64,000 nt of DNA from Phallusia mammillata. Lineage: Eukaryota. The position numbers and the translations under genes are program-made. Positions 1-45,624 of the stretch are shown here, piece after piece (position 1 is the first letter of the stretch; the number at the start of each line of letters is the position of its first letter). The stretch lies in assembly GCA_965637545.1 (NCBI GenBank), contig OZ281500.1, forward strand, positions 20,522,001-20,586,000. Direction: 5' to 3'. The notes beneath the pieces were generated by a model that was given only the letters and a program-made list of their open reading frames with translations, was not told the origin of the DNA and ran no database searches.

Positions 1-3000
1 GTCAACGCAACTTTTTATGTTGCAAGTTTGTCAATGTCGTAATACAAAATTATTATATTCTCTACTTGAGAAATTGTCAAATAAAGACGAAACCAAAAAT
101 GTGAAACACAAACGGTTCCATTTGTCGAACACCAAATAAACAATAATAAATGTTTTTATGCATTGAAATATGCAATGGTCACAATAAAATGGAATTGCTT
201 GTTTGCAATTTGTGTCAAAAAATAATTATTACCACTCAATAAACGGAGAGTCAAAGTAATTATTCAGCTTCTGATAAAAGCTTAAGTCACAAAATAAAGT
301 ATTTGATTTACCAGCAGGTTATGCTGGCGACGTCATTTAATAAAATTGGTACCTCCCTAATAAGAAGGTAAAGTCAATAGTTGCAAGGTAATGCAACATT
401 GTCAGACACATGATGTGTACAAAACAACTGAATGCGAATCAAATCATATTCGTTGTCAAATTATAAATATTTGCGATTTGGTATTCAAATAACATTCAAA
501 TACCGCGTTGTAGTAACAGAATAAGAACAATTTACAATGTACATGTTGGCAGTCATGGATGAAAAATTTAAGCAGTTTCCAAAACTGGGAGATGATGTGC
601 AGATGCTATCCGCAATGATCTTACTCCTGATGAGCACTTCTTGTCAACATCTTTTCACTCGTCAGCTGCAAAAGAATAAGATTCACGATTAGCAAATAAC
701 TTTAAATCTTTTATATCTTGAACCAACTAATCTTAACGATTTTATTTTATGTTGCTAAAAGTAACTTCTTCTTACCTTTGACTAGAATTGCTGATGTGTA
801 GATTGACACATTCGTCAAAACACAACTGTCGTTGCCGTTTAGTTGACCATGTTTCCATTTAGTTGCAAGTTGCCAACCAGAAACATCAAGTCACTCCCTC
901 CAATCGGGAATGGAGATTTGCTGATTCTGATTCGCTTTTGTGCATTTTGCTTTGTTTCGCTGTTGCTCGCAAGGAACCAATTTTGTCGAATGAATCCCAA
1001 AGCATATGCTACCTGTATATATATGGACTCTACAATGGATGATCGAAACGCTATCTGCAGTCGAACGATGCTTCTCAGAGCTTTCCCACTTGCTGTATAG
1101 ATCTGGAGGTATCGATTACAGCGTTACGAGTGTATTCTGGCGCTGATGATGATGATTATTACAGCTTTGTTGTCAGACCGGGTCCCACACGAAGAGAAAC
1201 AAGCTTCACTGACGGTTTCCACGAAAGACAATGGGACGAAGGTGTAGATTTCATGTTATGTCATGATGGCACGAGACTGTACAAGTGATCACAATTCCCA
1301 AACTATATTTGATCAAAATCTTGTTTTAACAAGATTTTTAAAACACCTACACCAAATTCACAGTGTTAACACGTTGACTCCCGTAGCAAGTTAAACCAAA
1401 CCCAAACCAGCTAACTATTCGCAATCGCATCGTTTACAGCTAACTCATACCACGTCAAAACATAGGCTAATATAAAATTTCGTCTTGTATCGCGCGTTGG
1501 TATGTGAACATGCATTTTCTCGTTATACTTTCATATACACGGTGATAACCTTTTTTTAGATTATTAGTTTAAGCATCTTTTTTATTACAAAGGTTTCTTA
1601 TTATGAGCCTTGACCCCACGCATATATATGTTTTTGAAGCAACAGTTTAGTGGCGTTTCTATAGTTTTCAATGTCAATGAATAGAAATACCAGTCATTTG
1701 TGTATCGATAACTTATGTTTGTGTTTTGCTTATCTGGTAACTTGATCTTTTTTCAGATAGCTCGAGACAATATCAGTTTTGACTTTCAAACGCATAATTT
1801 ATTGCGAAAAAAAAACAAAGGTCAATAAATGAAAAATGAAAATGTCATTTTAATGGTCGCAATACAATCAATGCAATTTAATTTCACCCAATTGGGCAAA
1901 TCAAAGAAATCGTAAACGCAAACGATGCGTCAAAGTCAATTGATGAAATATCGTTCGAAGTCGCATTAGACTTACACGTTGAAATGTTAACATACGAATA
2001 CACTTTGATAAAGCGAGTCAACGCAACTTTTTGTGTTGCAGGTTTGTCAATGTCGCCATACAAAATCATTATATTCTCCACTTGAGAAATTGTCAAATAA
2101 AGACGAAACTAAAAATGCGAAACACAAACAGTTCCACTTGTCGAACACTGAATGAACAACAATAAATACTTTTATGCATTGAAAAATGCAATGGTCACAA
2201 TGAAAAGAAATTGCGTGTTTGCAACTTATGTCACAACATATCGTCACCATTCAATGAGCGGTAATGTCAAAAGTATTACTCAGCTTTTTGATAAAAGTCC
2301 AAGTCAGAAAACAAAAATAATTACCAGCAATTAATGCTGGCGACGTCAGGTCAAAAAATTGTTACCTTCCTAACAAGAGGAATAAGTCAATGTTAAATAG
2401 TTGCAAGTTAATGCAACATTCTCAGCCACACGGTGTGTACAACACAACTCAATGAGAATCAAGTCATATTTGTTGTTAAATTGACAAAATATTTGCGAGT
2501 AAGTATTCAAATAACGTTTGAATACCACGTTGAAGTCACAAAACAAATATGTACACTATGTAGATAACCATGGTTGAGAACACATTTCTCAAAACTTGGA
2601 CGTTGCGTAGATGATGTGCAAATGCTTTCTGCAACGATCTTGCTACTGATGAGCACTTCTTGTCAAAATCATTTCACTCACTTCTGTAAATAAACAAGAT
2701 CAGCGATTAGCAAACAAAATTTTGTTGTTTATGTTGTGGACAAGCCTAATTAACGATTTTATGGTATTGTATACAGTGACATCCCCTTACCTTTGTGCAG
2801 AATTGTTGAGATGTAGATTGACAGCTTTGTAAAAACATAACTGTCGTCGCCGTTTAGTTGATCATGTTTCCATTAAGTTGCAAGTTGCTAACTATAAGCA
2901 TCAAGTCACACCTTCCAATCGGGAATGGAGATTTGCTGATTCGTTTTTCCACATTTTTCTTCTTTTGCTGGTGCTCACAAGGAACCGAACTTGTCGAATG

Positions 3001-3300
3001 AATCCCAAAGCATATGCTACCTGTGTATATAGGCACTCAACAACGGAGGCTCGAAACACGATCTGCAGTCGAACGATGCTTCTCAGAGCTTTCCCACTTG
3101 CTGTATAGGTCTGGAGGTATCCATTACGGCGTTATGATGATAAATGTTGTTTACTTGACGCGTGATGACCCAACAGGCTTTATGAAAAGGGGCCCACGCG
3201 TCCGGGTGCCAGCGATATTTGGCGTTTCCACGACAGACAATGAGGAGCCGGTGTACATTTCGATGTACCTTCGAAGAATAGGCAACCACGCGCAAAGCGT
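1..3300 (-). repeat. ~2-kb repeat family, copies U1 (1-~1330, partial) and U2 (~1331-3300); intron-bearing strand is minus
   Basis: The same blocks recur about 2 kb apart, e.g. gtcaacgcaacttttt at 1 and 2017, cttacctttg at 771 and 2786. They are reverse complements of the copies at 3.9-5.6 kb and 12-19.5 kb. Confidence 0.9.
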
Positions 3301-3337
3301 AGGATTTTTGTCTGCTTATAGTTACCGATGGGTTATT

Positions 3338-3345
3338 TGACGTCA
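3338..3345. promoter_or_regulatory. CRE-like palindrome TGACGTCA in a CpG-rich spacer between inverted repeat copies
   Basis: TGACGTCA at 3338-3345, with further ACGT/CGCG motifs to ~3390. Function is inferred only. Confidence 0.3.
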
Positions 3346-3929
3346 TACTGTTACGCGTGCGACGTACGTGCAGCAAACTTTGACGTCGCATTGAAATTGA
3401 GCTGCTGATTTCAACACTCGTTTGAAAATTTTCCAGGAACAATTTAGCCGTAATAAACACATAAACACAAAATATTAATCTCTTTCAGTAAGTAAATCTT
3501 TTAGTAGATCCTTACTGCATACTTCATAGTATTTTTCTGAAGCTAAAAAATTTTGTTCGTATCAATAGCATTGTAATCTACATATGTTTAAGTTTTAATT
3601 TCAGTCCATGTTAATCCGTTTTCAATATAACTCATGCTTGTTACTCTGCTCTAGTTAACACCACGACAAAGGCCTCTGCAGAAAACGCCATTTGACACCA
3701 GTTTGTCTTGTACGAGTATTTTAAAGCATAATTTGTAAAAAACGTACATTTGCGTTGCAGTAAAATTTGCGACACACGATATCTTTAAATCATAAGACTG
3801 GTAAATTGGACTTGAAATTTTCATTTATGGATTAAACCAGTTTGGCAAATAGGCTAAAACCTCGCTTGTAGTACTGGCTTATTGTGCTACAGTTGTAAAC
3901 GACAATAATTCATCTTGTAAAGGTTGTTA

Positions 3930-5600
3930 CAGTCATAAATAACACGTGTCTCGAATATGATGTCTCGTGCCATCACGACATGACATGAAATCTACACCTT
4001 CGTCCCATTGTCTTTCGTGGAAACCTTCAGTGAAGCTTGTTTCTCTTCGTGTGGGAGCCGGTCTGACAACAAAATTGTAATAATCATCATCAGCGCCAGA
4101 AAACACTCGTAACGCTGTAATCGACACCTCCAGAACTATACAGCAAGTGGGAAAGCTCTGAGACGCATCGTTCGACTGCGGATCCCGTTTCGAACATCCA
4201 TTGTTGAGCCCTATATATACAGGTAGCATATGCTTCTAGATTCATTCAATAAATTTGGTTTCTTGCGAGCAACAGCAAAAAAGGAAAATGGCGGGAATCA
4301 AATCAGCAAAGCTCCATTTCCAATTACAAGGAGTGACTTGATGTTTCTGGTTGGCAACTTGCAACGAGACAGAAACATGATCAACTAAACGGGACGACAG
4401 CTGTGTTTCGACAAAGGTGTCAATCTACACATCAACCATTCTACTGAAAGGTAAGAAAATGTCACTTTAAGTAAAAAATCTTAAATCGTTTACTAAAATG
4501 ATTTAAGATATAAAAGGTTAAATGCATTTTGCTAATCGAGAATCTTATTCTTTTGCAGCTGACGAGTGAAAATATGTTGACAAGAAGTGCTCATCAGGAG
4601 CAAGATCATTGCGGATAGCATCTGCACATCATCTACGCATTGTCCCAGTTTGGGAACTGTACATTTTTTATCCATGACTGTACGGTGTAAATACTATTTT
4701 TGTTATTACAACGCGGTATTCAAACGGTATTTGAATATCAAATCAGAAATATTTTGTAATTTTGACAACGAATGTGACTTGATTCGAACTTATTTGTTAT
4801 GTACACATAATGTGTCTGACAATGTTGCATTTACTTGCAACTATTTAACATTGACTTCTCCCTTTGGTTAGGGAGGTACCAATTGTTTGCCTGACGTCGC
4901 TAACATATACTTACTGGTAATTTACATTATTAATTTGATTGATCTTTTATATAAAAAAAATGACTTGAGCTTTTATAACAAAGCTAAATAGTGTTTTTGA
5001 TTTTCTGCTCATTGAGTGGTGACGATATTTTTGTGATACTTTATTTTGTAACTTAAGCTTTTATTAGAAGCTGAATAATGACTTTGACTCTCCGCTTATT
5101 GAGTGGTGATAATAATTTTGTGACACAAATTGCAACCACGCAATTTACTGTTATTGTGACCATTGCATTTTTCAATGCACAAAAACACTTATAGTTGTTC
5201 GACAAATGGAACCGTTTGTGTTTTGTTTTATTGGGTTTCGTCTTTATTTGACAATTTCTCCGGTGGAGAATATAATAATTTTGTATTAAGACATTGACAA
5301 ACTTGCAACATAAAAAGTTGCGTTGACTTGCTTTACCAAAGTGTATTCGTATGTTAACATTTCAACGTGTAAGTCCAAATTGAGACTTCGAACAATGTTT
5401 TATCGATTGACTTTGGCGCATTGTTTGCGTTTACGATTTGTATGACTTACCCAATTGGGTGCAATCAAATTGCAATTATTGCACTTGTGACGACTGAAAT
5501 GACATTTGCATTTTGCATTTAATGACCGTTGTTTATCGCAATAAATTGTGTGTACAAAAACCAAAACTGACTTTGGCTCAAGCTTTACAAACAAAAAATT
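3930..5600 (+). repeat. ~2-kb repeat family copy U3, inverted relative to U1/U2
   Basis: Reverse complement of the U2 blocks. Intron GTAAG at 4451 to TTGCAG at 4558. Confidence 0.9.
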
Positions 5601-5694
5601 ATAAAATCCCAGACAAGCAAAATGTAACTTAGGATTTGATATACAGTCGAACGATGCTTCTCATGGCTTTCCCACTTGCTGTATAGGTCTAGAG

Positions 5695-5725
5695 CAGGGG
5701 TCACCAAACTACGGCTCGCGGGTCT
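5695..5725 (+). mobile_element. Truncated hAT/Charlie-type MITE end
   Basis: CAGGGGTCACCAAACTACGGCTCGCGGG preceded by GTCTAGAG (Charlie-like target site). It interrupts a short repeat-family fragment. No partner end found. Confidence 0.45.
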
Positions 5726-6803
5726 GACTGCAATACTAGCACGGAAACCTTTTATTTACTTATTTGATTCTCATACTGTCGTATTGAATCATGATATTTC
5801 TTATGAAATTATAAAGTCACCAACGTTCTGCCCAAGGACCACTGCCTAACGTAAAAGAACTTTTTTGATCGATCTAAGTTATATTAGAAAATAAAAGAGT
5901 CTATTGTTGAAGATTTATTTAGGTGCCTATAGTTGCATAGATATTTTAGTTTCGCGCAGAGTACGACTGTTACGAGTGTAAATCCATCACTAAAAATGTT
6001 TGCAAATGTTGACTTAGCCTAACTGCATGACCAGTTTTTATAATGAAATAGTAAAACAAAGATGACATTTTTTGTGCATACTACTAAATAAATAAATCTT
6101 CTCTATCATATTTGTTTTAATGTCTTATAAATTTGCCTTTTTGTTATCCATTTTATTGCAGGCTAACATGAGGCTACGTAAATACACACAAAAGTTATTA
6201 GAGTTGTTGATTTGTCGTCAGTGTTAAGGATTTACACAAGGTCGAAAGCCAGAAAGGACAGCTTGCTCGCTTTTTCCTGGTATATAACAGGCTCCTGAAT
6301 TTTCTTCCATATAGTTCTTCACTCGCCGTTTAAAGTCAAAAGGTATAGACGACCGCATTAGCTCGGGGCTTCTATAACTTCTAGTTGTAATTTTTTTGCG
6401 CACGCGGTAAAGAATTTGTCGACTTTTTTCCATGTTTTCACGTCCGTACTCGTCAACTCGTTTCCATAGAGTTCTGTTAAAGTACTCGTACAGCGCGATG
6501 TCCTGTAAAAGTAAAATCAAGTCAAGTTTGTTTGCATTGTCAGCACTTTGTCCAGTTGTCATTGTTGAACAGCTTCGTAAACAAGCAAGGACAAAAAACC
6601 CATTGGTTATCGAGTAAAGTGTCCTGACTGTGAAAAATTCACCCAGGGTGGTCACAATTTTATGTTAGGTCTGATTTTTCTCATAGCAGTCACAAAAACG
6701 GATTAAAAAGGGGACCGCAAAAAAATACTGCCACAGAGATTTTAGTGAATAATTTCAGTTCTTGATAAGGTGCAGACAGTGCACGTTGTTTTGACCTAAT
6801 CGG

Positions 6804-7113
6804 CAAGGGTCGGCAACCTTTTTGGCGACGCGTGCCAATTTACTTGTTATTTCCAGGTGTTAATGACCTCGCGTGCCAACGTTTTTCTAAATAATTGTGG
6901 CTCGTGCCAGCAGATATCAATAATAAAGAGAAAGCAGAGTGTTTTTTGCATGTAAGGCTGAATTTTAAGACGATGGCACGTTAAAAAGCATAAACAAGCA
7001 GTGTAACAGGGTAAATTGTTACTTCATATGAACACGCAAATCGATTGGCGTGCCATAAAAAAGCACCTCGCGTGCCAACCTTGGCACGCGTGCCAGGGGT
7101 TGCCGACCCCCTG
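6804..7113. mobile_element. hAT-type MITE in the last GAL3ST intron
   Basis: Ends CAAGGGTCGGCAACC...GGTTGCCGACCCCCTG with subterminal TGGCACGCG motifs. TSD not preserved. Confidence 0.7.
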
Positions 7114-8267
7114 GTATAAGGTCTCATCAGTGCAGCAGGTGACGAGAGATGGGCCATATTGGCTAGGGTTTGACGTGCCTGTCGTATCGTACAGCTATTA
7201 ATGTAACAAATGTTTGCCATATTGCTTTATACATACAACTCGGCTAAGATTCGTGAATGTACGTTTGTGCAGTTCGGACGGAAATTCCTTTTTTCGTGCG
7301 TAAGTTCGGCTATTCATCCAAACACAACTGGCTACAATTTCCCATTCCAAACACAAAAGATCCTGGCACACAAAAAGGTTAAAACCCAGCAAAAATAAAT
7401 CGTTTTCTAGAAGTTGCACACCTTTAAAAGTATCAAGGATTCGTCCAGATATTCCAACAGCATCACTAGGTCCATGTTCTGGTCCAGCTCTTCTATTTTT
7501 CTGTCAATCTCTTTTGTATCAATCAACATCGGATCAATTCCCAAATGATGAGATTGAAAATTTTTGAATCTGATAAAAAGGATTCGAAAGCAAAATTTAA
7601 CAGCATACTGCCAGACTTTTCAAAAATGAAAACAGTATAGGCCCAAAAATTGTCCGGATTAGGCAAAGATCTGGATTAACCAATGCCGATTAGTTTAAGC
7701 CTTATCACATTACAAATCATCTGTACCTCAAGTTGTGTCCGAATTACAGATCCGGTTTTACCTAGGTTTATTGTACATGTTAATATGTTGCCTATAGACG
7801 GAATATGAAAACGTTTCCAATCATATGTACACACTTATTAAGCGACTATGTCAATTTCTCCAGAATTTTTTCTAACCAAAAACAGAAAAGAAAACCGACT
7901 TTCCAAGTGAAATTTACCTGAAGTAGAACGGAACCGAGGAATTAAGCAAAGGAGCCGCTTTCATCAAAAACTTATCAACACCTAATTTTGTATCTTGTGT
8001 AATGTAAGTTTTGGGCATTTCTTCACAAAAGGTTTTCCTTTCTCTCCGGTTTGATAAAAATTGTAGGCTGACTGAAAATTCGTCCATGGTTTGCGTATGA
8101 CTGTGAAGTATCTGAACATACGAGAAATAGTTTTTACATATAACCTACATCACGGTAAATTAGTAAGGGGTGCCATTTGAAAAAATATATTTTAAAATAA
8201 TGTCGCCGATTGTAAAAATATGCGTTTATAGCAGAACAGGAATGCAAGTACCATTCCGATTTAAGGA

Positions 8268-8698
8268 ATCAATCAATCAATCAATCAATCAATATAGGTG
8301 TCGTGTCAGAGTCTGACGTCGGCGACAATCAAATGTCATAATTGTATACAAGGGGCATTGTTCGGCGGTGGGAGCCCCAGTCCCTTCCGCCGGAGCTTTT
8401 ATCAAGGCTTGCTTTTCTAGATCCGCTCAGATCCCCTACCGAGGTAGGTGCAGAGTTTTCCTCATCCTAGCCTTCGCCTGACGAGGCATAACCTACAAGG
8501 CAGTGGGTGGTTTGAAATCAGAGTTTTCCTTCTCCTATCTCATGTGCTGGCTATGCTAAGAGTCATGAGCAACCCTTCACTCCATTGGAGACCAGAACTG
8601 CCAGTAGGGACATATCCGGAGCCACAAGGCCCTTGCTGGGGATAGGTACTGTCTCTCAGTGGAACGACGGATGCAGTTTAACGTCATACCCAAGACAC
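8268..8698 (-). mobile_element. GC-rich non-LTR-derived (SINE/RTE-like) insertion with (GATT)n tail
   Basis: GC-rich island in a GAL3ST intron. The minus strand ends in (ATTG)n at ~8268-8293. Motifs GGGTATGACGTTAAACTGCATCC and AGGAGAAGGAAAACTCTG resemble RTE-type ends as recalled, not searched. Confidence 0.45.
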
Positions 8699-9172
8699 TT
8701 TGTTTAAGCAATATCAGAGCGAAAATGTCATGTTTATTCCGAATTGGCAAAATCAAAATGAAAATAGCGTTTTCGCTCCGATAAAGCTAAATCAGAAGGA
8801 CAGCATTTACAGACACAATCAATCATATCATACTTGGTGTCGGGATGGAAGCATTTTTTCATCTCCTCAGCATCGAACCTCGAATGATCCACCACAATAT
8901 TAGCATTCTTTGGAAGCATAAATTCACATTTAAAGCGTCCAGGATACCCACCAACGAACCAGCACGGAAACATGGCGGCACAAAGCTGTAAACATTATTT
9001 GTATTCAACCACAGTTGAGTACCAACACAAGATATCACAACAGAAATGTTTGCTAAATGCCGATAGAAATAGCGCAGGTACTTAAATTAACGATAAAACT
9101 GGGTTAGGGTTAGGAACTAATTTTAATGTTAAGAACTAACGAGTTTATAGAGCTCTTCTGGCAAATGTATTT

Positions 9173-9224
9173 TTATTCCGACGTTTCGACGTACTATACA
9201 GGTCGCCTTCATCAGGGTAAATAA
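9173..9224 (-). ncRNA. Minimal type-I hammerhead ribozyme, Penelope-like
   Basis: Minus strand: ttatttacc-CTGATGA-A-GGCG(loop)CGTC-GAAACGTC-ggaataa. Core intact, 4-bp stem II, palindromic stem III, imperfect stem I. Confidence 0.55.
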
Positions 9225-10679
9225 CACTGAATGCGCGTAGCACAGTGCACGGTAAACAAAGGAAAAAACAAATGGTGTCACAACGCAACGAAAACACTGC
9301 GCGATAACGAATGATTTAATCTTTGAGCAGGTGCCTGTAGCACGTTAATTTTTTAGGAACTAACTTTTAGGTTAATTTTATTGTTGTTATTATTATGAAA
9401 CCTCATCTCAAACGTAATAATCCTAACCGTCAGCATTTTTGCACAAATAGCATTCAAAATATTTTGGAATGCTCTTTGCTTCAGCTAACGGTATTTATCA
9501 AACTTGTGCGGTGTGAGTTCTTGTGTTAGTAGATTTTCTCTTTAGTTGGGTTACCGGTTACTTACAAATTGTCCCTTTTCTTAAATTTAAAACGAAATAA
9601 ATGATGCCATAGGAGTACGGTATAAATTCAATCTCCGAAAATCAAGAAACATGAGCTTTAACACTAACCTTGTCGAAACGATGTTGCTTAATGTAATGAA
9701 GTAAAATAGTTTGCACCGTTGTTGAACCAGTTTTGTGGGTTTTAATGAACACGAATTTCGAAACAGGTTTGCACTGATTCTCTTTAAACTGGGACAAATT
9801 ACTTGTTGTTTGATTTCCATCAAATGTCGTTGGTGTTTGTTGTGTTGGCCAAAAAACAAAATGAACCTCATTTTTAAATACTTAGTTTACTCTAAAGAGT
9901 ATAGAGCGACCCAAAGTACAATAACTTGTCTTGTTGAAACAAAGCACAAAATGTCTGCAAGACTTAACCTGTTAGTCCCCATCATGGCTTACGGCGCATG
10001 ACCTATTCGTTATGGAAGCTAGTAGCCTATATGCCGTGTACTAACTTACTGGTAAAAAATGGAGAAATCTTTACCTTCCAACTTACTCCAGTTGCGTCTC
10101 GGACTTTTGCTGTTGATGTGTTGGATCTGTGGTTATAGAAACTGCTGATTGTTTGAAAGGTCGGTATGTTAGCAAACACTAGGAAAGTTAGTGTGACAGA
10201 GATGCACAGAATAAAACATTTCTTCGTTTTTGAAATCATTTTATCGAGACAGACTGTGAACAAATTTAAACTTTGATCCAAGCTGTTTCTAACACTGGAA
10301 AAAAATAAAACAAAATTACTCACAGCACAAACACATTGTCAACCGCCTTTTACCTTTGGACTTCTTTTCGTTTCAGAATTTGACTTACTTGTTCTTTTTC
10401 TGTCAAGGTAAGTAGTAATTAGCTTTTTTGCCGCGAAGTGTTTTTTAACACCCTAGAACTACAAATGTGGACGGTTTTAGTGCATCAGTGACTATACTTC
10501 ATTTTGTATTAAACCGACAGCAGGTATGATGCTGTAGCAAAAATGTCTGTCAACTAAGAAGGTTGAGAAACACTGAACGAACAGAATCTATAAATCTAAC
10601 TAACTTTCCACGTATGTGCCTTGACAAAATCAAATACAGTTCAAACACACAAAGAATTGGGCATTGTATTACTTGTATT

Positions 10680-11570
10680 CGCGCTATTATCTTGCGTAGA
10701 AACCGTCAGTGAAGCTTGTGTCTCTTGGTGTGGAACCCGGTTTGACAACAAATTTGTAACAGTCACCATCAGCGCCAGAAAACTCTCGTAACGCCGTAAT
10801 CGATACCTCCAGATATATACAGCAAAACAGCAAAACAAAGAAAAATGAGGAGAAGTCGAATTGGAATCAGCAAATCCCTATTCCCGATTGGAAGGAATAA
10901 CTTTATGTTTCCTGGTTGGAAACTTCAACGAAATAGAAACATAATTAAAATTAAATTAAACAACTAAACTGCAATGAAAACGCTCGTAATGCGGTAATCG
11001 ATACCTCCAGTGGTGGGATTCTGCCGGTTCGCAACGGTTCTATAGAACCTTCTCACAAAATTTTATGAGATCAGCGAACCGGTTAGCATTACTGGTTACT
11101 GTCAATGGACTTTTTGTAACAGAACCGGCTGAAAAATATGACTTTTGTGAGAGAATCAGCTGACAAAAAAATGAATCCTACCACTGGTTACTTCCAGACC
11201 TATACAGCAAGTGGGGAAGCTCTGAGAAGCATCCCTCGACTGCAGATTGCGTTTCGACCATCTATTGTTGATTTTCTATATATGCCGGTAGCATACGCTT
11301 CGAGATTCATTCGTGAAGTTTCTTCCTTGTGAGCAACAGCAAAAAAGCAATATGTTGGGAAGAAAAGCAGCAAATCTCCATTCCCGCTTCAAAGTAGTGA
11401 CTTGATGTTTTCTGGTTGATTTTATGTGACGACATTGACAAACTTGCAACGTACAAAGTTGCGTTGACTTGATTTATCAAAGTGTATTCGTATGTTAACA
11501 TTTTAAGTCCATATTGAGACTTCGAACGATGTTTTATTAATTGACTTTGGCGCATCGTTTGGGTACCGCT
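10680..11570 (+). repeat. Fragmented repeat-family copy U4, internally deleted and MITE-interrupted
   Basis: Contains gaaaccgtcagtgaagctt, cagacctatacagcaagtggg and gacattgacaaacttgcaac blocks with deletions between them. Confidence 0.8.
11008..11186. mobile_element. hAT MITE, 179 bp
   Basis: TIR CAGTGGTGGGATTC...GAATCCTACCACTG. Decayed 8-bp TSD gatacctc/gttacttc. Same family as 23275-23453. Confidence 0.85.
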
Positions 11571-11779
11571 TTAACACCATACCTCACGGGAGATCCACTT
11601 TCACAAGGTGGCGTAAAGAGCTAAATTATTTATTTAGCGGCTAAAGAGGACTTAAAGGTTTTTAAATTTTTACATCAGTAACTAAGTTCTATTGCTAGTT
11701 GTATACCTTATATACCTTACCCGACCCTTATAGCCCTAACCGTAAGCATTTTTAGAGAGATATCGTTTTAAATATGAAA

Positions 11780-14700
11780 AGTGCTCTTTGTATTTTGCAT
11801 TTAATGACCGTTGTTTATCGCAATAAATTGTGTGTACAAAAACCAACTGACTTTGTCTCTAGGTTTACAAACAAAATTCCAGACAAACAAAACATACGTT
11901 ATAAGTGAGGATTTGGTTTGAAAGTTAATCCACACAAAACGACTAGTATTGGGATAACACAAGCATATTTAGTGTTGCAACTGTAATCATTTGCACTGTG
12001 TCGTGCTTTCGTGGCACAACACGAAATTTACACCTTTATCCCATTGTCTGTCGTGGAAACGCCAAACATCACTGGCACCCGCACGCGTGGGCCCCTTTTC
12101 ATAAAGCCTATTGGGTCATCGTGCGTCAAATAAACAACTTCTATTTATCATAACGCTGTAATCAACACCTCGAGACCTATACAGCAAGTGGGAAAGCTCA
12201 GAGAAGCATCATTCGACTGCAGATCGCGTTTCGAGCATCCATTGTTGAGTCCCTCTATATAAAGGTGGCATATGCTTCGAAATTCATTCGGCAAATTTGG
12301 TTCCTTGCGAGCAACAGCAAAAAGCAAAATGGCGGGAATCAAATCAGCAAAGCTCCATTCCCGATTGGAAGGAGTGACTTGATGTTTCTAGTTAGCAACT
12401 GGCAACTAAATGGAAACATGATCAACCCAACGGCGACGGCAGTTGTCTTTTAACAAAGGTGTCAATCTATACATCAACAATTCTACTCAAAGGTAAGAAG
12501 ATGTCACTTTAAGCAATATCAAATTAAACCATAAACTAATCTGGTTAACGATGTAAAAGATTAAAATGCAGTCTTCTAATCACGAGTCCTATTCATTTGC
12601 AGACGTGAGTGAAAAGATGTTGACTAGAAGTGCTCATCAGGAGTAACACCATTGCGGACAGCATCTGCACATCATCTACGCAATGTCCCAGTTTGGGAAC
12701 TGTACATGGTTTCCCACAATATTTATATATTGTAAATATAAGTTTTGTTACTACAACGCGGTATTCAAATGTTATTCGAATACCAAATCGCAAATACTTT
12801 ATAATTTTGACAATGAATATGACTTGATTTATTTGTTATGTACGCGCAATGTGGCTGACAATGTTGTATTAACTTGCAACTATTTAAAATTGACTTCTCC
12901 CTTTTGTTAGGAAGGATATATTTTTTTGACCTGACGTCGCCAGCATTAATTGCTGGTAATTATTTTTATTTTCTGACTTCAGCATTTATCGAAAAAGCTG
13001 AATAATGACTTTGACTTTCCGCTCATTGAGTGGTGACGATAATTTTGTGACATAAATTGCAAACAAGCAATTTACTTTTATTGTGACAGTTGCATTTTTT
13101 AATGCATAAAAACATTAATTGCTGTTTATTTGGTGTTTGACAAATGGAACCGTTTGTGTTTCGCATTTTTAGTTTCGTCTTCATTTGACAAATTCTCCAG
13201 TGGAGAAGATAATGCTTTTGTATTACGACAATGTCAAACTTGCATAACAAAAAGTTGCATGGGCTTAGTTTGACAATTTGTATTAATACCTCAATATTTT
13301 GACGTGTAAGTCTAATTCGACTTTTAATAATATTATCACTTGACATTAGCGCATCGTTTGCGTTTACGATTTCCATGACTTACCCAAATGGGTGAAATTA
13401 AATTGCATTTATTGTATTGTGACGATTGAAATAACATATTTATTTTTGTGTTTATTGACCGTTGTTTTTTCGCAATAAAATATTCGTTTGAAAGACAAAA
13501 CTGATATTGTCTCGAGCTATCTAAAAAAAGATGAAATTACCAGATAAGAAAAACACAAACATAATAAGTTATCGATACACAAATGACTGGTATTTCTATT
13601 CAGTGAAAATGCAACCTATAGAAACGCCACAAAACTATTGCCTTAGAAACATATACATGCGTAGGGTCAAGACTAACATAATGAAAAAAACATTCTTAAC
13701 TTAATGATCTAAATCTAAAAGAATGTTATTGCCATGTGTATGAAGGCATAACTAGAAAATGCATGTTTGCGTACCAACGCGCGATACAAGACGGAATTTT
13801 TAATTAGCCTATGATTTGACGCGGTGTGAGTTAGCTGTAAACGATGCGATTACGAATAATTAGCTGGTTTGGGTTTGGTTTAATTTGCTACGGGAGTCAA
13901 GATGTTAACACTGTGAAATTTATGTAGGTGTTTTTAAAATATTTTCGATAACAAACATATTTAGTGTTGCAATTGTGATCACTTGTACAGTCTCGTGCCA
14001 TCACGACATAACATGAAATCTACACCTTCGTCCCATTGTCTTTCGTGGAAACCGCCAGTGAAGCTTGTTTCTCTTCGTGTGGGAGCCGGTTTGACAACAA
14101 AATTGTAATAATCATCATCAGCGCCAGAAAACACTCGTAACGCTGTAATCGGCACCTCCAGACCTATACAGCAAGTGGGAAAGCTCTGAGAAGCACCGTC
14201 GACTGCAGATCGCGTTTCGATGACAACGTGTGGAGCCCCTATATATACATGTAGCATATGCTTCGGGATTCATTCGACAAAATTGGTTCCTTGCGAGCAA
14301 CAGCGAAAAAAAGAAAAATGCTGAGAATCGAAACAGAATCAGCAAATCTCTATTCCCGATTGGAAGGAGTGACTTGATGCTTCTGGTTAGCAACTGCAAT
14401 TAAATGGAAACATGATCAACTAAACGGCGACGACAGTTGTGTTTTGACAAAGGTGTCAATCTATACATCAACAATTCTACTCAAAGGTAAGAAGATGTCA
14501 CTTTAAGCAATACAAAATTAAAGCATAAACTAATCTGGTTAACAACGTTAAAGAATAAAATGCAGTTTTCTAATCGCGAGTTTTATTCATTTGCAGACGT
14601 GAGTGAAATGATGTTGACAAGAAGTGCTCATCAGGAGTAACACCATTGCGGATAGAATCTGCACATCATCACAGCAATGTCCCAGTTTGGGAACTGTACA

Positions 14701-17700
14701 TGGTTTCCCACATAAGTTATATATTGTAAATACTATTTTTTTTATTACAACGCGGTATTCAAATGTTATTCGAATACCAAATCGCAAATACTTTATAATT
14801 TTGACAATGAATATGACTTGATTTATTTGTTATGTACGCGCAATGTGCCTGACAATGTTGTATTAACTTGCAACTATTTAACATTGACTTCTCCCTCTTG
14901 TTAGGAAGGTAATATTTTTTTGACCTGACGTCGCCAGCATTAATTGCTGGTAATTATTTTTATTTTCTGACTTCAGCATTTATCGATAAAGCTGAATAAT
15001 GACTTTGACTTTCCGCTCATTGAGTGGTGACGATAATTTTGTGACACAAATTGCAAACAAGCAATTTACTTTTATTGTGACAGTTGCATTTTTCATTGAA
15101 CGAAAACATTTATTGTTGTTTATTTGGTGTTCGACAAGCGGAACCGTTTGTGTTTCGCATTTTTAGTTTCGTCTTCATTTGACAAATTCTCCAGTGGAGA
15201 AGATAATGCTCGTGTATTACGACAATGTCAAACTTGCATAACAAAAAGTTGCATGGGCTTAGTTTGACAATTTGTATTCATACCTCAATATTTTGACGTG
15301 TAAGTCTAATTTGACTTTGAATCATATTATTAACTGACTTTAACGCATCGTTTGCGTTTACGATTTCTTTGACTTACCCAATTGGGTGCAATTAAATTGC
15401 ATTGATTGTATTGCGACGATTGAAATGACATTTGCATTTTTTATTTATTGACCATTGCTTTTTGCAATAAAATATTCGTTTGAAAGACAAAACTGATATT
15501 GTCTCGAGCTATTTGAAAAAAGATGAAATTACCAAATAAGCAAAACACAAACATAAGTTATCGATTCACAAATGACTGGTATTTCTATTTAGTGAAAATG
15601 GAAACTACAGAAACGCCACTAAACTATTACCATGAAAACATACAGATCCGTGGGTTCAAGGCTAATATAATGGAAAAAAGATGCTTAACTTAATGATCTT
15701 AAAAAATGTTATCACGGTGTCTATAAAAGTATATCTAGAAAATACATGTACCCATACCAAAGCAAGATACAAATGAAATTTTAAATCAGTCTACGATTTG
15801 ACTCATGTATGTTGGTTGGAAACAGCATGTCGGCAAATAACTCCGTCGTCGACGTGTGGTTCAGTTCGCTACCTTCACAAAAATGATAACATCATCAAAA
15901 TTATATAGCCGTTTTCAAAATATTTCCATGACACAAACATGTTTAGTGAATTGCAATTATGATTACTTGTACAGTCTCGTGCCATCATGGCATAACATGA
16001 AATCTACACCTTCGTACCATTGTCTTTCGTGGAAACCGTCAGTGAAACTTGTTTCTCTTCGTGTGGGACCCGGTCTGACAACAAAATTGTAATAATAATC
16101 ATCATCAGCGCCAGAAAACACTCGTAACGCTGTAATCGATATCTCCAGACCTATACAGCAAGTGGGAAAGCTCAGAGAAGCATCGTTCAACTGCAGATAG
16201 CGTTTCGGGCCTCTATTGTGGAGCACCTATATATACAGGTAGCATATGCTTCGGGATTCATTCGACAAATTTGGTTCCTTGCCAGCAACAGCGAAAAAAA
16301 GAAAAATGCTGAGAATCGAAACAGAATCAGCAAATCTCTATTCCCGATTGGAAGGAGTGACTTGATGCTTCTGGTTGGTAACTTGCAACTAAATGGAAAC
16401 ATGATCAACTAAACGGCGACGACAGTTGTGTTTTGACAAAGGTGTCAATCTATACATCAACAATTCTACTCAAAGGTAAGAAGATGTCACTTTAGGCAAT
16501 ACAAAATTAAACCATACACTAATCTGGTTAACAATTTAAAGAATAAAATGCAGTTTTCTAATCGCGAGTCTTATTCATTTGCAGACGTGAGTGAAATGAT
16601 GTTGACTAGAAGTGCTCATCAGGAGTAACACCATTGCGGACAGCATCTGCACATCATCACAGCAATGTCCCAGTTTGGGAACTGTACATGTTTCGTGCAT
16701 GGTTTCCCACAAAAGTTATATATTGTAAATACTATTTTTTTTTATTACAACGCGGTATTCAAATGTTATTCGAATACCAAATCGCAAATACTTTATAATT
16801 TTGACAACGAATATGGCTTGATATATTTGTTATGTGCACGCAATGTGTCTGACAATGTTGTATTAACTTGCAACTATTTAACATTGACTTCTCCCTCTTG
16901 TTAGGAAGGTAATATTTTTTTGACCTGACGTCACCAGCATTAATTGCTGGTAATTATTTTTATTTTCTGACTTCAGCATTTATCGAAAATGCTGAATAAT
17001 GACTTTGACTTTCCGCTCATTGAGTGGTGACGATATTTTTGTGACATAAATTGCAAACAAGCAATTTACTTTTATTGTGACCATTGCATTTTTTAATGCA
17101 TGAATACATTAATTGCTGTTTATTTGGTGTTTGACAAATGGAACCGTTTGTGTTTCGCATTTTTAAATTTGCTTTCATTTGACAAATTCTCCAGTGGAGA
17201 AGATAATGCTTTTGTATTACGACAATGTCAAACTTGCATAACAAAAAGTTGCATTGATTTAGTTTGACAATTTGTATTAATACCTCAATATTTTGACGTG
17301 CAAGTCTAATTTGACTTTGAATCATATTATTAACTGACTTTAACGCATCGTTTGCGTTTACGATTTCTATGACTTACCTAATTGGGTTAATTTAAATTGC
17401 ATTTATTGTATTGTGACGATTGAAATGACATTTGCATTTTTCGTTTATTGCCCATTGCTTTTTGCAATAAAATATTCGTTTGAAAGTCAAAACTGATATT
17501 GTCTCGAGCTATTTGAAAAAAGATGAAATTACCAGATAAGCAAAACACAAACATAAGTTGTCGATACACAAATGACTGGTATTTCTATTCAGTAAAAATG
17601 CAAACTAAAGAAACGCCACTAAACTATTGCCCTAAAACATATATATGCTTGGGTCAGGACTAACATAATGGGAAAAAAGATGCTTAACTTAATGATCTTA

Positions 17701-19470
17701 AAAAATGTTATCACGGTGTCTATAAAAGTATAATTAGAAAATACATGTACCCATACCAAAGCAAGATACAAATGAAATTTTAAATCAGTCTACGATTTGA
17801 CTCATGTATGTTGGTTGGAAACAGCATGTCGGCAAATAACTCTGTTCAGTTCGCTACCTTCACAAAAATGATAACATCATCAAAATTATGTAGCCGTTTT
17901 CAAAATATTTCCATGACACAAACATGTTTAGTAAATTGCAATTATGATCACTTGTACAGTCTCGTGCCATCATGGCATAACATGAAATCTACACCTTCGT
18001 CCCATTGTCTTTCGTGGAAACCGTCAGTGAAGCTTGTTTCTCTTCGTGTGGGACCCGATCTGGCAACAAAACTGTAATAATCATCATCATCAGCGCCAGA
18101 AAACACTCGTAACGCTGTAATCGATACCTCCAGACCTATACAGCAAGTGGGAAAGCTCTGAGAAGCATCTTTCGACTGCATATCTCGTTTCGAACATACA
18201 TTGTGGAGCACCTATATATACAGGAAGCATATGCTTCGGGATTCATTCGACAAATTTGGTTCCTTGCGAGCAACAGCGAAAAAAAGAAAAATGAGGAGAA
18301 TCGAAACAGAATCAGCAAATCTCCATTCCCGATTGGAAGAAGTGACTTGATGTTTCTGGTTGGCAACTTGCAACGAGACAGAAACATGATCAACTAACCG
18401 GGACGACAGTTGTGTTTTGATAAAGCTGTCAATCTATATTCAACAATTCTACTCAAAGGTAAGAAGATGTCACTTTAAGCAATATCGTGAAATCGTTTAC
18501 TGAGGTTCTTAACAACGCAAAATATTAAAATGCATGCAGTTTGCTAATCGCGAATCTTATTCATTTGTAGATGTGAGTGAAATGAAGTTGACAAGAAGTG
18601 CTTATCAGGAGTGACACCATTGCGGATAATATCTGAGCAACATCTAAGCAATGATTTTTGGGAACTGTGTTCTCAACTATAGGGTTTCCCACAGTGTACA
18701 TATTTCTTTTGTTACTGGAACGTGGTATTCGAATACCTAATCGCAAATATTTTATAATTTTGACAACGAATATGATTTGATTCGCATTTAGTTGTTACAT
18801 ACACATAATGTGTCTGACAATGTTGCATTAACTCGCAACTATTGACTTTGACTGCTTGTTAGGGAGGTAACAATTTTATTAAATGACGTCGCCAGCATAA
18901 CTTGCTGGTAATACAAGTTTTTTTTATTTTTTATTTCGTGACTTGAGCTTTTATCAGAAGCTGAATAATTACTTTGACTTTCCGCTCATTGAGTGGTGAC
19001 GATATTTTTGTGACACAAATTGCAAACAAGCAATTTACTTTTATTGTGACCATTGCATTTTTCAATGCCTGAAAGCATTTATTGTTGTTTATTTGGTGTT
19101 CGACAAGTGAAACCGTTTGTGTTTCGCATTTTACTTCGGCTGACTTTCGACTATTTCTCCAGTGGAGAATGCTTTTGTATTACGACGATGTCCAACTGGC
19201 AACACAAAATTTGCGTTGACTTGCTTTATCAAAGTGTATTCGTATGTTAACATTTCAACGTGTAAGTCCATATTGAGACTTTAAACAATGTTTTATCAAT
19301 TGACTTTACGCATCATTTGCGTTTACGATTTCTATGACTTACCCAATTGGGTGAAATTAAATTGCATTTATTGTAACTTACTTGTGACGATATAAAATGA
19401 TATTTGCATTTTTCATGCAATAACTGTGGCCGTTTCCAAATAAATATTGTTTGAAAATCGCATTTAGTGT
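11780..19470 (+). repeat. Head-to-tail array of repeat-family copies U5-U8, period ~1987 bp
   Basis: cttgtacagtctcgtgcc recurs at ~13982, ~15966 and ~17952. ctcaaagGTAAG recurs at 12493, 14487, 16476 and 18459. Confidence 0.92.
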
Positions 19471-21420
19471 TTATTACAGGATCTTTCCGGCAAATAGTAG
19501 GCATTTTATGTCGACGATCACTGATATATACATGGAATTATCTGTAAGAATGATTGACGAAGCAACAGCGCTTCCTAATCAAAATCAGTCAGCAAATGTT
19601 TGAAAATCAAAACTTTTTCAGAAATGTAAACATAGAGTTATCATTTTGACAAAAACAAACATTATCAAACTGTATTTGACTGTCAGGTAGATTACAAAAA
19701 CTTTGTACTTCACCGATAATGGACTTACTGGTAACTCACAAAAATTCATTGCTTAATCAAGACATAACGCACTTTGCAGAGAAAATTATATTAGCCTTTT
19801 AGTTTCAAGTTAGACTCTATTTTTATCCCAATTTTGTGTTGATCGTGTTATTTGTCATTTTAAACGAAAGCGATACACTCATATTGCATGCGTTGACGAT
19901 TTGTCTGGAATGAAATGAGTCCCAAATCACACTAAATTTTGATTCTTCATTAAGCGTTTTGTACATTGCTGCCAAACATACTGTGCATTCTTGCCAAAAT
20001 ACGCAACAAATATAATATGAATCACAGTACGCCAGGCCCATTGAAGGCGCTATACCGAATCAGAATTTATGTTCATCTTAACTGAATTTATGTTCAAATA
20101 TAACATGGTTAGAAATTCGCAGCTCTCAAGACATTTAAAGGTACAACGAAGGCTACAAGTGAAGTCTATAGTGAAAAGTATTTTTTATGCCACACACTTT
20201 TACTCCTATACGTAAATTAAACACTTTTGTAATGTTTCAATTACTGCATGTAGTTTGCATTAGGTAGCTACAGAATTGCGGGTTTAGGCTACTATTACTT
20301 GTAGCAGTCAGCAGGAATTTAACTTGTAATTGTTGAAAATAAGACAAAATAGGGACTCAAGTCAGAAACAAGGACATTTCTTAGAAATAAGGAAAAGGAC
20401 GGTATGGCAGCCCGGGCTATAGTGAACACAATTTGTAGCTGCAAAAATGCTTAAAACGAACTTTGAAATGGGCCTATTGTTAACCTGCAAGCGTTAAAAC
20501 GAACAGCTGTTTTCTAATGAATCGGGATTGATAAAGCCACTTTATAAGCATTTTTAAAGCAAACAAACAACAAATCAACAATTATTGTACTTGAGAACTT
20601 GTATTTAATATAATTGTTTTCTGCTGCCTTGTTTAATGTATGCATAACTACTCATGTAACGTAGTGACAAATCCGTTTTATTCAAATTCGGAACTCATTA
20701 ACTGCAGTGTTCATATTTTGATTGCTTCATTTCCGGCGCGATATTTTAATTGGCGTTTTTATTAAAACAGCTTTAAACGTCGTGCAGGCAGCATGGCTTG
20801 AGTGAGGAGATTTAAGTTCGTTTCAGTGTGGATAATATTTTTCTACATGCCAGAAAAACTAGTCATGACCGAAACAGTTATTTATACTTTGTATTTAAAA
20901 TGCAGACACTTTATTGTCTTTCTGAAGTCGTGTACTCAGTAAGCACTCAGTCAAAAATTAACCAGTAAGTAGGTGGAAATCGAAAAGGACGCCAAAATAC
21001 GGACAACCGAAAAGTTGTATTTTCATACGAAACGAAACAACTTTTAAAACAAATCTTTGCATTTTACATGAAACAAGACATATCAATTGCGAAATATTTT
21101 GCCATAAACAATCTATTTCAGCAACTTCTTGTCTGTAGAAAATGTTTCGTGTATATCACTACATTTCAGATCTAGGTTTACTTCCCTGTGGCAGGGATTT
21201 GACTGTCATTTCACTAAGTTTGTTTCTTGTAATTGTTAAAAAAGGGACTCAGGCCAAAAACAAGAACATTTCTTAGAAATAAGGACAAAGAATTTTACTA
21301 AGACACTACCGTTCAAAATAAGGACAAATCTTAGAAATAAGGACGTTATGGCAACCCTGCCAATCAGCAACAAAAATAGGTTTCACTTTTTTCAAGCTAA
21401 AACGAGTTTGACCATAGTTT

Positions 21421-23138: not shown

Positions 23139-23274
23139 AACTATGTACATAAATTTTGTCAAAAAGTTGTCCTTGTGCGTTTGCTTGTTGTGCTGTTGTC
23201 TTTATGGTGTTGGGGCTTAAACTTTTTGTCTATAACCTTTCTGTAGTAAACGAACCAATTATATACCTAATCAC

Positions 23275-23453
23275 CAGTGGTGGGATTCAATTTTGTGTGA
23301 GTCGGTTCTATCACAACAGTCATATTTTTCAACCCGTTTGTCGATAGTAAATCCATTGACAGTAACCAGTAATGCTAACCGGTTCGCTGATCTCATAAAA
23401 TTTCGTGAGACGGTTCTATAGAACCGATGAGAACCGGTTGAATCCAACCACTA
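23275..23453. mobile_element. hAT MITE, inverted relative to the 11008 copy
   Basis: TIR CAGTGGTGGGATTC...GAATCCAACCACTA. 8-bp TSD ctaatcac/cttatcac. Confidence 0.85.

Positions 23454-43420: not shown

Positions 43421-45624
<2,204 letters not shown>

What the first reader, a model, noticed from the sequence alone, without database searches (positions are those of the whole stretch)
1..19470. Unidentified ~2-kb repeat family amplified about 8 times in tandem and inverted orientation
Seen: U1-U2 (minus), U3 (plus), fragmentary U4, and U5-U8 in tandem with a ~1987-bp period. The units have no TIR or TSD and are not simple satellite. They keep splice signals, long nearly open frames and many palindromes, yet no copy gives an intact ORF that I can name. 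Inference: a young amplified gene/lncRNA family or an amplified pseudogene cassette. This is the main unexplained system in the window.
Basis: partly seen in the sequence, partly recalled or inferred. Interest (0 to 1): 0.8.

Follow-up and report, generated by a model that had tools for sequence, protein, structure and literature searches.

The report
Local 2-kb non-coding gene-like repeat array
A 2-kb stretch of sea-squirt DNA that looks like a small non-coding gene (promoter-like box plus one intron) has been copied about eleven times at this one chromosomal spot, with no sign that it codes for protein or is expressed, so it is an ordinary local duplication and not a new system.

Summary
The repeat is real. 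A unit of about 1,985 bp occurs as 7 long copies and 4 fragments, 72-95% identical. They lie on the minus strand from 3.8 kb left of the window to 3266, and on the plus strand at 3972-5622 and 10678-19456. Searches of the whole genome by DNA and by translated frames find it only at this locus, while short mobile elements in the flanks give hundreds to thousands of candidates. It is therefore not a transposon or a dispersed satellite.

The array sits inside a duplicated and inverted cluster of galactose-3-O-sulfotransferase-like genes. Gene B and gene C are mirror copies, so the same local rearrangements copied the genes and the units. Trees for different segments of the unit conflict, which indicates gene conversion.

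The unit does not look protein-coding. It gave no Pfam or Rfam match and no protein relatives, substitutions show no codon-phase bias, and ORF lengths are at chance. A majority consensus does not lengthen any ORF.

All 7 long copies keep a TATA-like box about 32 nt before an initiator-like motif. A 215-nt conserved block follows, then a 110-nt GT-AG segment with branch site and pyrimidine tract. Such a signature is found in at most 2% of shuffles.

Twelve probable RNA runs hold next to none of it.

Verdict: a locally amplified, gene-like non-coding unit, probably inert. Interest is low.

The parts
1..1267 (-). U1: window part of a full-length minus-strand copy that begins 721 bp left of the window (head variant alpha)
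   Evidence: unit positions 1-1989 map to 1267..-721 at 81% identity
1268..3266 (-). U2: minus-strand copy with head variant beta; unit positions 1804-1955 are diverged or deleted
3267..3971 (.). Unique 705-bp spacer at the centre of the head-to-head (inverted) arrangement
   Evidence: a single match in the whole genome; no local repeat
3972..5622 (+). U3: plus-strand copy, unit positions 1-1546, with an internal 87-bp tandem duplication at 4963-5123
5638..5694 (-). 57-bp stray fragment of the unit (positions 157-212) in the opposite orientation
6227..9881 (-). Galactose-3-O-sulfotransferase-like gene C with several exons. It is the inverted duplicate of gene B, which lies left of the window. 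It is context and not part of the unit.
   Evidence: PF06990, E 8e-7; matches at window 6356-6502 and 9675-9785; 78-93% identity to -9643..-4654, inverted
10678..12064 (+). U4: broken copy made of unit positions 28-175, 300-420, 155-389, 1220-1358 and 1432-1509. A 180-bp element at 11009-11188, also present at 23273-23452, is inserted in it.
12148..13999 (+). U5: tandem copy with head variant beta; intron-like segment at 12493-12602
14000..15983 (+). U6: the reference tandem copy
14239..14275 (+). Core-promoter-like pair in U6: a TATA-like box at 14239-14248 and an initiator-like TCATTC at 14270-14275, with its A at 14272, 32 nt after the first T of the box
   Evidence: the initiator-like 8-mer is invariant in 7 of 7 copies; the TATA-like box is kept in all, with 1-2 changes in 3 copies
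14272..14486 (+). Putative non-coding first exon of U6 (215 nt). It holds only short ORFs of 15-19 codons and lies in the best-conserved block of the unit.
   Evidence: pi 0.115 against 0.18 elsewhere; Fisher p 2e-4
14487..14596 (+). 110-nt intron-like segment of U6: AAG|GTAAG donor, CTAATC at 14570-14575, pyrimidine tract and CAG
   Evidence: donor and acceptor present in 7 of 7 copies; interior pi 0.27; the full signature is found in 0.4-1.8% of shuffled units
15984..17968 (+). U7: tandem copy, 94.6% identical to U6; intron-like segment at 16476-16584
17969..19456 (+). U8: last tandem copy, cut off at unit position 1486 where a dispersed element of about 145 bp begins
   Evidence: 1,348 genome candidates for 19451-19601; many different loose ends at 19454-19463

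Best explanation
The unit is a locus-restricted, non-coding but gene-like segment of about 1,985 bp. It was multiplied by ordinary local DNA rearrangement and is most likely inert today.

Shown:
1. About eleven copies or fragments lie within 23 kb and nowhere else in the 240-Mb genome.
2. They sit in a cluster of galactose-3-O-sulfotransferase-like genes. Gene B and gene C, with their flanks, are mirror-image duplicates. Units fill the space between the 3' ends of the two genes, arranged head to head around a unique 705-bp centre. A further tandem run, U4-U8, begins exactly where the gene C arm ends (10671/10678).
3. Different segments of the unit give conflicting, well-supported trees.
4. There is no coding signal.

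Inferred:
1. One inverted duplication copied a gene together with neighbouring units.
2. Unequal crossing-over then added tandem copies. U5-U7 are the latest.
3. Gene conversion between copies in both orientations produced the mosaic.
4. The ancestral unit was, or contained the 5' part of, a small RNA polymerase II transcription unit: a TATA-like box and initiator, a 215-nt non-coding exon, a 110-nt intron, and possibly a polyadenylation hexamer about 1.1-1.2 kb downstream.
5. Most copies now drift close to neutrality without producing abundant RNA.
For: Locality:
- The DNA search of the unit gives 18 matches, all within C7:20518255-20541456.
- Six-frame searches with two ORFs are also local only.
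- Positive controls with flank pieces give 733, 2,742 and 1,348 candidates.

Context:
- PF06990 matches flank and interrupt the array.
- The gene B region is an inverted copy of the gene C region at 78-93% identity, a range similar to the 76-84% between units of the two arms.
- The unit shows no similarity to the sulfotransferase modules.

Mosaic ancestry: (U2,U5) has support 1.00 in columns 0-250, while (U5,U6,U7) against (U8,U2,Um1,U3) has support 1.00 in columns 1100-1500 (identity tables). Um1 is the full copy whose window part is U1.

Non-coding:
- 20 ORF pieces gave no Pfam family over threshold.
- Two word searches found no relatives.
- Substitutions are evenly spread over the three codon phases in every 180-nt window (all p > 0.13).
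- No frame has consistently low pN/pS.
- ORF lengths are at chance.
- A majority consensus has a longest frame of only 87 aa.

No known or structured RNA.

Gene-like signals.

No RNA seen: 12 probable RNA runs of the same species label (4 studies) hold about 0.00 of 571 sampled words. Contigs of two of them cover none of 13500-19453.
Against: - Conservation is uneven: pi is 0.115 in the promoter and exon-1 block, 0.27 in the intron-like segment and 0.18 elsewhere.
- The splice and initiator motifs are kept in all long copies. Purely neutral decay does not predict this, and it would fit ongoing selection on a transcript or a regulatory element.
- The RNA evidence is weak. The runs are only guessed to be RNA, were seen as assembled contigs and are small. 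They may come from embryos, and adult or tissue-limited expression would be missed.
- The intron-signature test was defined after seeing the motif.
- pN/pS has little power here. The neighbouring sulfotransferase exons themselves give 0.33-0.97.
Confidence: 0.6

Rival explanations
1. An active, lineage-specific lncRNA gene family. Each unit would be transcribed from its own TATA/initiator promoter, spliced once or more and polyadenylated. Copies next to the sulfotransferase genes point towards those genes' 3' ends, so they could give convergent (antisense) read-through. The inverted arms could also pair as double-stranded RNA.
For: - The initiator-like motif is invariant and the TATA-like box is kept at canonical spacing.
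- The donor, branch site, pyrimidine tract and acceptor are kept in 7 of 7 copies, while the intron interior is the most variable part.
- The promoter and exon-1 block is significantly more conserved than the rest.
- AATAAA or ATTAAA hexamers are kept in 5-6 copies about 1.1-1.2 kb downstream.
- An earlier, unchecked note reports another tandem array of whole non-coding transcription units with RNA support elsewhere in this genome.
Against: - Twelve probable RNA runs hold no words of the array, and two of them laid on it give no contig.
- There is no conserved RNA structure or covariation.
- No hairpin is shared between copies.
- Uneven conservation can also come from conversion tracts and indel-prone AT-rich stretches.
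Confidence: 0.25
2. A family of genes for short secreted or membrane peptides. One candidate is the minus-strand frame of 73-93 aa with a hydrophobic stretch and several cysteines. Another is a 15-19 codon micro-ORF in the putative first exon.
For: - The minus-strand frame over unit positions 120-400 is open in 5 copies.
- It has a weak sub-threshold match to a defensin-like family (E 0.029, 15 bits against a cut-off of 25).
- A 6-nt indel inside the plus-strand micro-ORF keeps its frame.
Against: - No ATG is conserved at the start of the minus-strand frame.
- Substitutions show no codon-phase bias (region 150-400: 27/31/32 changes, p 0.79).
- ORF lengths are at chance, and the consensus does not extend any frame.
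- There are no relatives.
- The frame runs over the TATA-like box on the opposite strand.
Confidence: 0.06
3. A transposable element or satellite family, for example a non-autonomous element or rolling-circle element that forms tandem arrays.
For: The array has multiple copies in both orientations and truncated copies. Mobile elements are inserted in it or abut it.
Against: - There is no copy outside this 23-kb locus, by DNA or by six-frame search, although the same tool finds dispersed repeats readily.
- No transposase, reverse transcriptase or helicase domain was found.
- There are no terminal repeats.
- The neighbouring genes are duplicated along with the units.
Confidence: 0.03
4. An assembly artefact: a collapsed or falsely expanded repeat, or a chimeric palindrome from long-read assembly.
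For: Palindromic and tandem structures are classic assembly problems. Short-read contigs show joints between copies and 78 of 201 contigs below 99% identity. These could be the other haplotype or unassembled copies.
Against: - The copies differ by 5-28% and have copy-specific indels.
- Copy-specific short-read contigs match with 0 mismatches.
- Depths of copy-specific contigs (about 80-160 in X1) are similar to each other. This fits one assembled copy each, but it is a rough inference without a single-copy baseline.
Confidence: 0.02

Closest known systems
Macrosatellites (kilobase-unit, locus-specific tandem arrays such as human D4Z4 or DXZ4; comparison from general knowledge)
   Same: The unit is over 1 kb, the runs are head to tail, the array is confined to one locus, and each unit carries promoter-like sequence.
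   Different: - There are only about 11 copies, far less uniform (72-95% identical).
- The orientations are mixed around an inverted centre.
- The sequence is AT-rich (35% G+C) and not CpG-rich.
- The unit has no ORF.
- Copy-number variation between individuals was not tested.
Tandemly arrayed gene clusters evolving by birth and death, as in the neighbouring galactose-3-O-sulfotransferase-like genes
   Same: Tandem and inverted duplication, truncated members, patchy gene conversion, and co-duplication with neighbouring genes.
   Different: The unit has no recognisable protein, no codon-phase signal and no relatives.
Tandemly repeated non-coding transcription units (lncRNA or host-gene arrays); one is reported elsewhere in this genome by an earlier unchecked note, s1-392425
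   Same: A whole promoter-plus-exon-plus-intron cassette is repeated head to tail.
   Different: No transcript was detected here, no small-RNA hairpin or snoRNA lies in the intron-like segment, and there is no sequence similarity to any other locus.
Large genomic palindromes and inverted segmental duplications
   Same: Two arms in opposite orientation around a unique spacer, with arm-to-arm sequence exchange.
   Different: The arms are unequal (about 12.9 kb against 6.7 kb), diverged by 7-25% and rearranged. This is far from the near-identical arms of classic palindromes.

Membership tests
Transposable element family | Copies dispersed at many genomic sites | tested here: not met
   All 18 DNA matches and all six-frame matches fall in C7:20518255-20541456. 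Control queries from the flanks give 733-2,742 candidates.
Transposable element family | Encoded transposition proteins or their remnants | tested here: not met
   20 ORF pieces covering a unit on both strands gave no Pfam family over threshold.
Transposable element family | Terminal repeats and target-site duplications | tested here: inconclusive
   No inverted repeat longer than 15 nt lies within a unit. In a tandem array the true ends cannot be defined.
Macrosatellite / large-unit tandem repeat | Head-to-tail array of units over 1 kb at a single locus | tested here: met
   U4-U8 and the left arm are head to tail with spacing of 1984-2000 bp, and the array occupies a single locus.
Macrosatellite / large-unit tandem repeat | Copy-number polymorphism between individuals | not testable with these tools
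   Only contigs of two DNA runs from one study were available. Joints between copies cannot separate haplotype variation from graph artefacts.
Protein-coding tandem gene family | An ORF conserved across copies, with substitutions concentrated at third codon positions | tested here: not met
   The longest frame open in all copies is 42 codons. There is no phase bias in any window, and ORF length is at chance.
Protein-coding tandem gene family | Homologues in other genomes or known domains | tested here: not met
   The exhaustive HMMER search was not run.
lncRNA gene family | Core promoter and splice signals conserved across paralogues | tested here: met
   A TATA-like box, an initiator-like motif 32 nt on, a donor, a branch site and an acceptor are present in 7 of 7 long copies. 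These are in-silico motifs only.
lncRNA gene family | Detectable transcripts | tested here: inconclusive
   Twelve probable RNA runs hold about 0.00 of the sampled words, and contigs of two runs do not cover the array. The samples are small, of uncertain type and seen as contigs only.
Known RNA families (Rfam 15), tRNA | A covariance-model match | tested here: not met
   There is no gathering-score match in 1-19470. At E <= 1 there is only one chance-level snoRNA match (24 bits against 50). No tRNA was found.
Segmental (inverted plus tandem) duplication | Neighbouring unrelated sequence is duplicated with the units at similar divergence | tested here: met
   Gene B region -9643..-4654 matches gene C region 10671..5972, inverted, at 78-93% identity. 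Units of the two arms are 76-84% identical.

The most novel reading that the evidence does not exclude
The units are an active, species-specific family of spliced non-coding RNA genes driven by TATA/initiator promoters. Their head-to-head and tandem amplification around duplicated sulfotransferase genes would produce convergent antisense or double-stranded RNA that tunes those genes. That would make this a recently born regulatory RNA locus caught during amplification.
Probability: 0.12. Interest if true: 0.45.

Novelty: new member of a known kind. Interest (0 to 1): 0.2.

Why it matters
Taken at face value this is an ordinary product of local duplication in a fast-evolving gene cluster, and it can be dropped from the list of unexplained systems.

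Its modest value is as a clean example. A whole promoter-plus-intron cassette with no coding content was multiplied together with neighbouring enzyme genes, and conversion tracts of different ages can still be read in it.

If transcripts are found, it would be a tractable case of a newly born, amplified lncRNA family in a chordate model. The 370-bp conserved block could then be tested by standard embryo electroporation.

Tried and rejected
- Transposon or satellite: rejected by the locality tests with positive controls.
- Decayed copy of the neighbouring sulfotransferase gene or of the 305-aa membrane ORF: no similarity by BLASTN, TBLASTX or TBLASTN.
- Protein-coding family:
  - Pfam on 20 pieces and two word searches found nothing.
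  - The sliding pN/pS scan, codon-phase test, ORF-length shuffles and consensus ORF test were all negative.
  - Control pN/pS on the sulfotransferase exons was only 0.33-0.97, so pN/pS alone has little power. One of my control coordinates (gene A) was out of frame and is disregarded.
- Known or structured RNA, tRNA, snoRNA or miRNA host gene: negative.
- Bacterial-type promoter and terminator scan: not meaningful for an animal genome.
- Spliced-leader RNA gene: considered because of the motif before the donor, but the putative exon is about 215 nt, so I did not pursue it.
- Not run:
  - the exhaustive HMMER search, structure prediction and the protein atlas, because nothing indicates a real protein;
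  - the third word search;
Exons were looked at singly by reference.
- Read laying was kept to 6,000 letters.
Full report
**Observation**

Self-comparison confirms a repeat unit of about 1,985 bp. In the window the minus-strand copies are at 1-1267 and 1268-3266. The plus-strand copies are at 3972-5622, 10678-12064 (broken), 12148-14003, 14000-15988, 15984-17973 and 17969-19456. Tandem spacing is 1984-2000 bp.

The window is G000:C7:20522001-20586000. After fetching 12 kb upstream, the array continues to about -3772. The first window copy is completed there (-721..1267), and two further truncated minus-strand copies lie at -1424..-717 and -3772..-3058. That makes 7 long copies and 4 fragments in 23 kb.

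Overall pairwise identity is 72-94.6%. Short-read contigs from two DNA runs reproduce copy-specific sequence without mismatch. With divergence this large, the array is not an assembly artefact.

**Not a mobile element or a dispersed satellite**

All 18 whole-genome DNA matches of the unit lie in C7:20518255-20541456. Six-frame searches with two unit ORFs also hit only this locus.

The tool can see dispersed repeats. A 200-bp element in the sequence that interrupts the left arm, a 380-bp element at 20980-21360 and a roughly 145-bp element that abuts the right end at 19451-19601 gave 733, 2,742 and 1,348 candidates. The 705-bp centre, 3267-3971, is unique in the genome.

**Context explains the geometry**

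The 'unique' 5 kb between U3 and U4 is a galactose-3-O-sulfotransferase-like gene on the minus strand (gene C, 9881..6227). Pfam PF06990 matches it at E 8e-7, and further exons are visible. Two more such genes lie upstream on the plus strand: gene A, and gene B at -9043..-4917. The genome holds at least 103 scored matches to this family.

The gene B region (-9643..-4654) is an inverted duplicate of the gene C region (10671..5972) at 78-93% identity. The layout is therefore: gene B forward, minus-strand units, unique centre, plus-strand unit U3, gene C reverse, then the plus-strand run U4-U8. That run starts at 10678, exactly where the gene C arm ends at 10671.

Divergence between the gene arms is in the same range as divergence between units of the two arms (76-84%). 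U5-U7 are closer to each other (87-95%).

Trees built on separate segments conflict with strong support. U2 and U5 share a very different 'beta' version of unit positions 55-135 (68% identical to the 'alpha' version). In the middle of the unit, however, U5 groups with U6 and U7, and U2 groups with the full copy whose window part is U1 (called Um1 in my scripts) and with U3. I read this as one inverted duplication plus tandem duplications by unequal crossing-over, followed by patchy gene conversion. These are inferences from the pattern.

The unit itself has no similarity to the sulfotransferase modules or to the 305-aa ORF at 22221-23138.

**Coding potential**

- Twenty ORF pieces that together tile a unit on both strands gave no Pfam family above threshold. 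The best were 12-15 bits against cut-offs of 23-27.
- Two word searches against 5.8 billion proteins found nothing.
- The longest frame open in all copies is 42 codons.
- The longest frames in single copies, 93-118 aa, match Markov shuffles (mean 94-97, sd 20).
- A majority consensus of the seven long copies does not lengthen any frame; its maximum is 87 aa.
- Substitutions are spread evenly over the three codon phases in every 180-nt window and in each candidate region (all p > 0.13).
- Sliding pN/pS shows no consistent frame. This measure is weak here, because the sulfotransferase exons themselves give 0.33-0.97.

I conclude that no protein is maintained.

**RNA families and structure**

Rfam at gathering thresholds finds only two SNORA16 genes far away, at 43827-44461. 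At E <= 1 the units give one chance-level match. There are no tRNAs. The best-conserved block has a consensus fold with an unfavourable covariation term and one compensatory pair out of 89. No strong hairpin recurs between copies.

**Gene-like signals**

On the strand that is '+' for U3-U8, every long copy keeps the following features. Coordinates are for U6.

- A TATA-like box at 14239-14248.
- An initiator-like TCATTC at 14270-14275, with its A 32 nt after the first T of the box.
- A conserved block running to 14486.
- The donor AAG|GTAAG.
- A CTAATC 21 nt before the acceptor.
- A pyrimidine tract and CAG, ending at 14596.

Donor and acceptor are present in 7 of 7 copies. Nucleotide diversity is 0.115 in the promoter and exon block, 0.27 inside the 110-nt segment, 0.146 just after it and 0.18 over the rest. 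The block is significantly more conserved than the rest (Fisher p 2e-4).

A full donor, branch site, pyrimidine tract and acceptor signature occurs in only 0.4-1.8% of shuffled units. I defined that pattern after seeing it, so the figure flatters the case. It agrees with the separate first-stage note s1-394876.

The putative exon holds only ORFs of 15-19 codons. Polyadenylation hexamers kept in 5-6 copies lie about 1.1-1.2 kb downstream. Exons were examined singly.

**Expression**

The index of public runs lists two holders of the 6-kb test stretch, both evidently DNA. Twelve runs of the same species label, guessed to be RNA and drawn from four studies, hold about 0.00 of 571 sampled words.

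Laying two of those runs gave no contig on 13500-19453. Their only match is to the dispersed element from 19454 on. This argues against abundant expression in those samples. It does not prove silence, because the samples are small, of uncertain type and seen as contigs only.

**Verdict**

The finding is real, but it is best read as a locally amplified, non-coding, gene-like unit embedded in a rearranging sulfotransferase gene cluster (confidence about 0.6 that it is essentially inert). The main rival is an active lncRNA family (about 0.25). The uneven conservation and the intact promoter and splice motifs keep that rival alive, and RNA data would decide it. Peptide-coding, transposon and artefact readings are unlikely.

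The organism name (the sea squirt Phallusia mammillata) comes from earlier unchecked notes. I did not verify it independently.

Noticed in passing
window 6227-9881 (-); genome C7:20504026-20517085 (+): There are three galactose-3-O-sulfotransferase-like genes at this locus: A and B in tandem, and C as an inverted duplicate of B. The genome as a whole gives at least 103 scored PF06990 matches out of 188 candidates, many in clusters on C3 and C6, which points to a large lineage-specific expansion. B against C exon pN/pS is 0.33-0.97, so some copies may be decaying.
   Followed up: partly
window 22221-23138 (+): An intronless 305-aa ORF with several hydrophobic segments lies just right of the array. 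Its only family match is a sub-threshold one to DUF5389 (E 0.0018, 18.8 bits against a cut-off of 25). It is unrelated to the repeat unit.
   Followed up: partly
window 19451-19601; 20980-21360; 11009-11188 and 23273-23452; genome C7:20519580-20519785: Several short dispersed elements (145-380 bp, with hundreds to thousands of genome candidates) abut or interrupt the array. The 145-bp one is found as nearby inverted pairs at other loci, as the ends of a miniature inverted-repeat element would be. It marks the point where U8 is cut off.
   Followed up: partly
window 43827-43963 and 44324-44461 (-): Two SNORA16-family H/ACA snoRNA genes lie about 360 nt apart (45-48 bits against a gathering score of 35), presumably intron-hosted.
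   Followed up: no
window 31736-32173 (+): An exon-sized ORF matches the nucleoporin FG-repeat region family (PF15967, E 7e-20), so a nucleoporin gene lies downstream.
   Followed up: no
window 4963-5123; 29042-29334; 39733-40065; 48370-48488: Small tandem repeats: an 87-bp duplication inside copy U3, and arrays with periods of 157, 75 and 45 bp elsewhere in the window.
   Followed up: no
window 12050-12147 and 3140-3230 (unit positions 55-135): Two sharply different versions of the 80 nt just upstream of the conserved promoter-like block exist. 'Alpha' is in six copies and 'beta' in U2, U5 and the leftmost fragment, and the two are 68% identical. This looks like an old island that escaped conversion.
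   Followed up: partly
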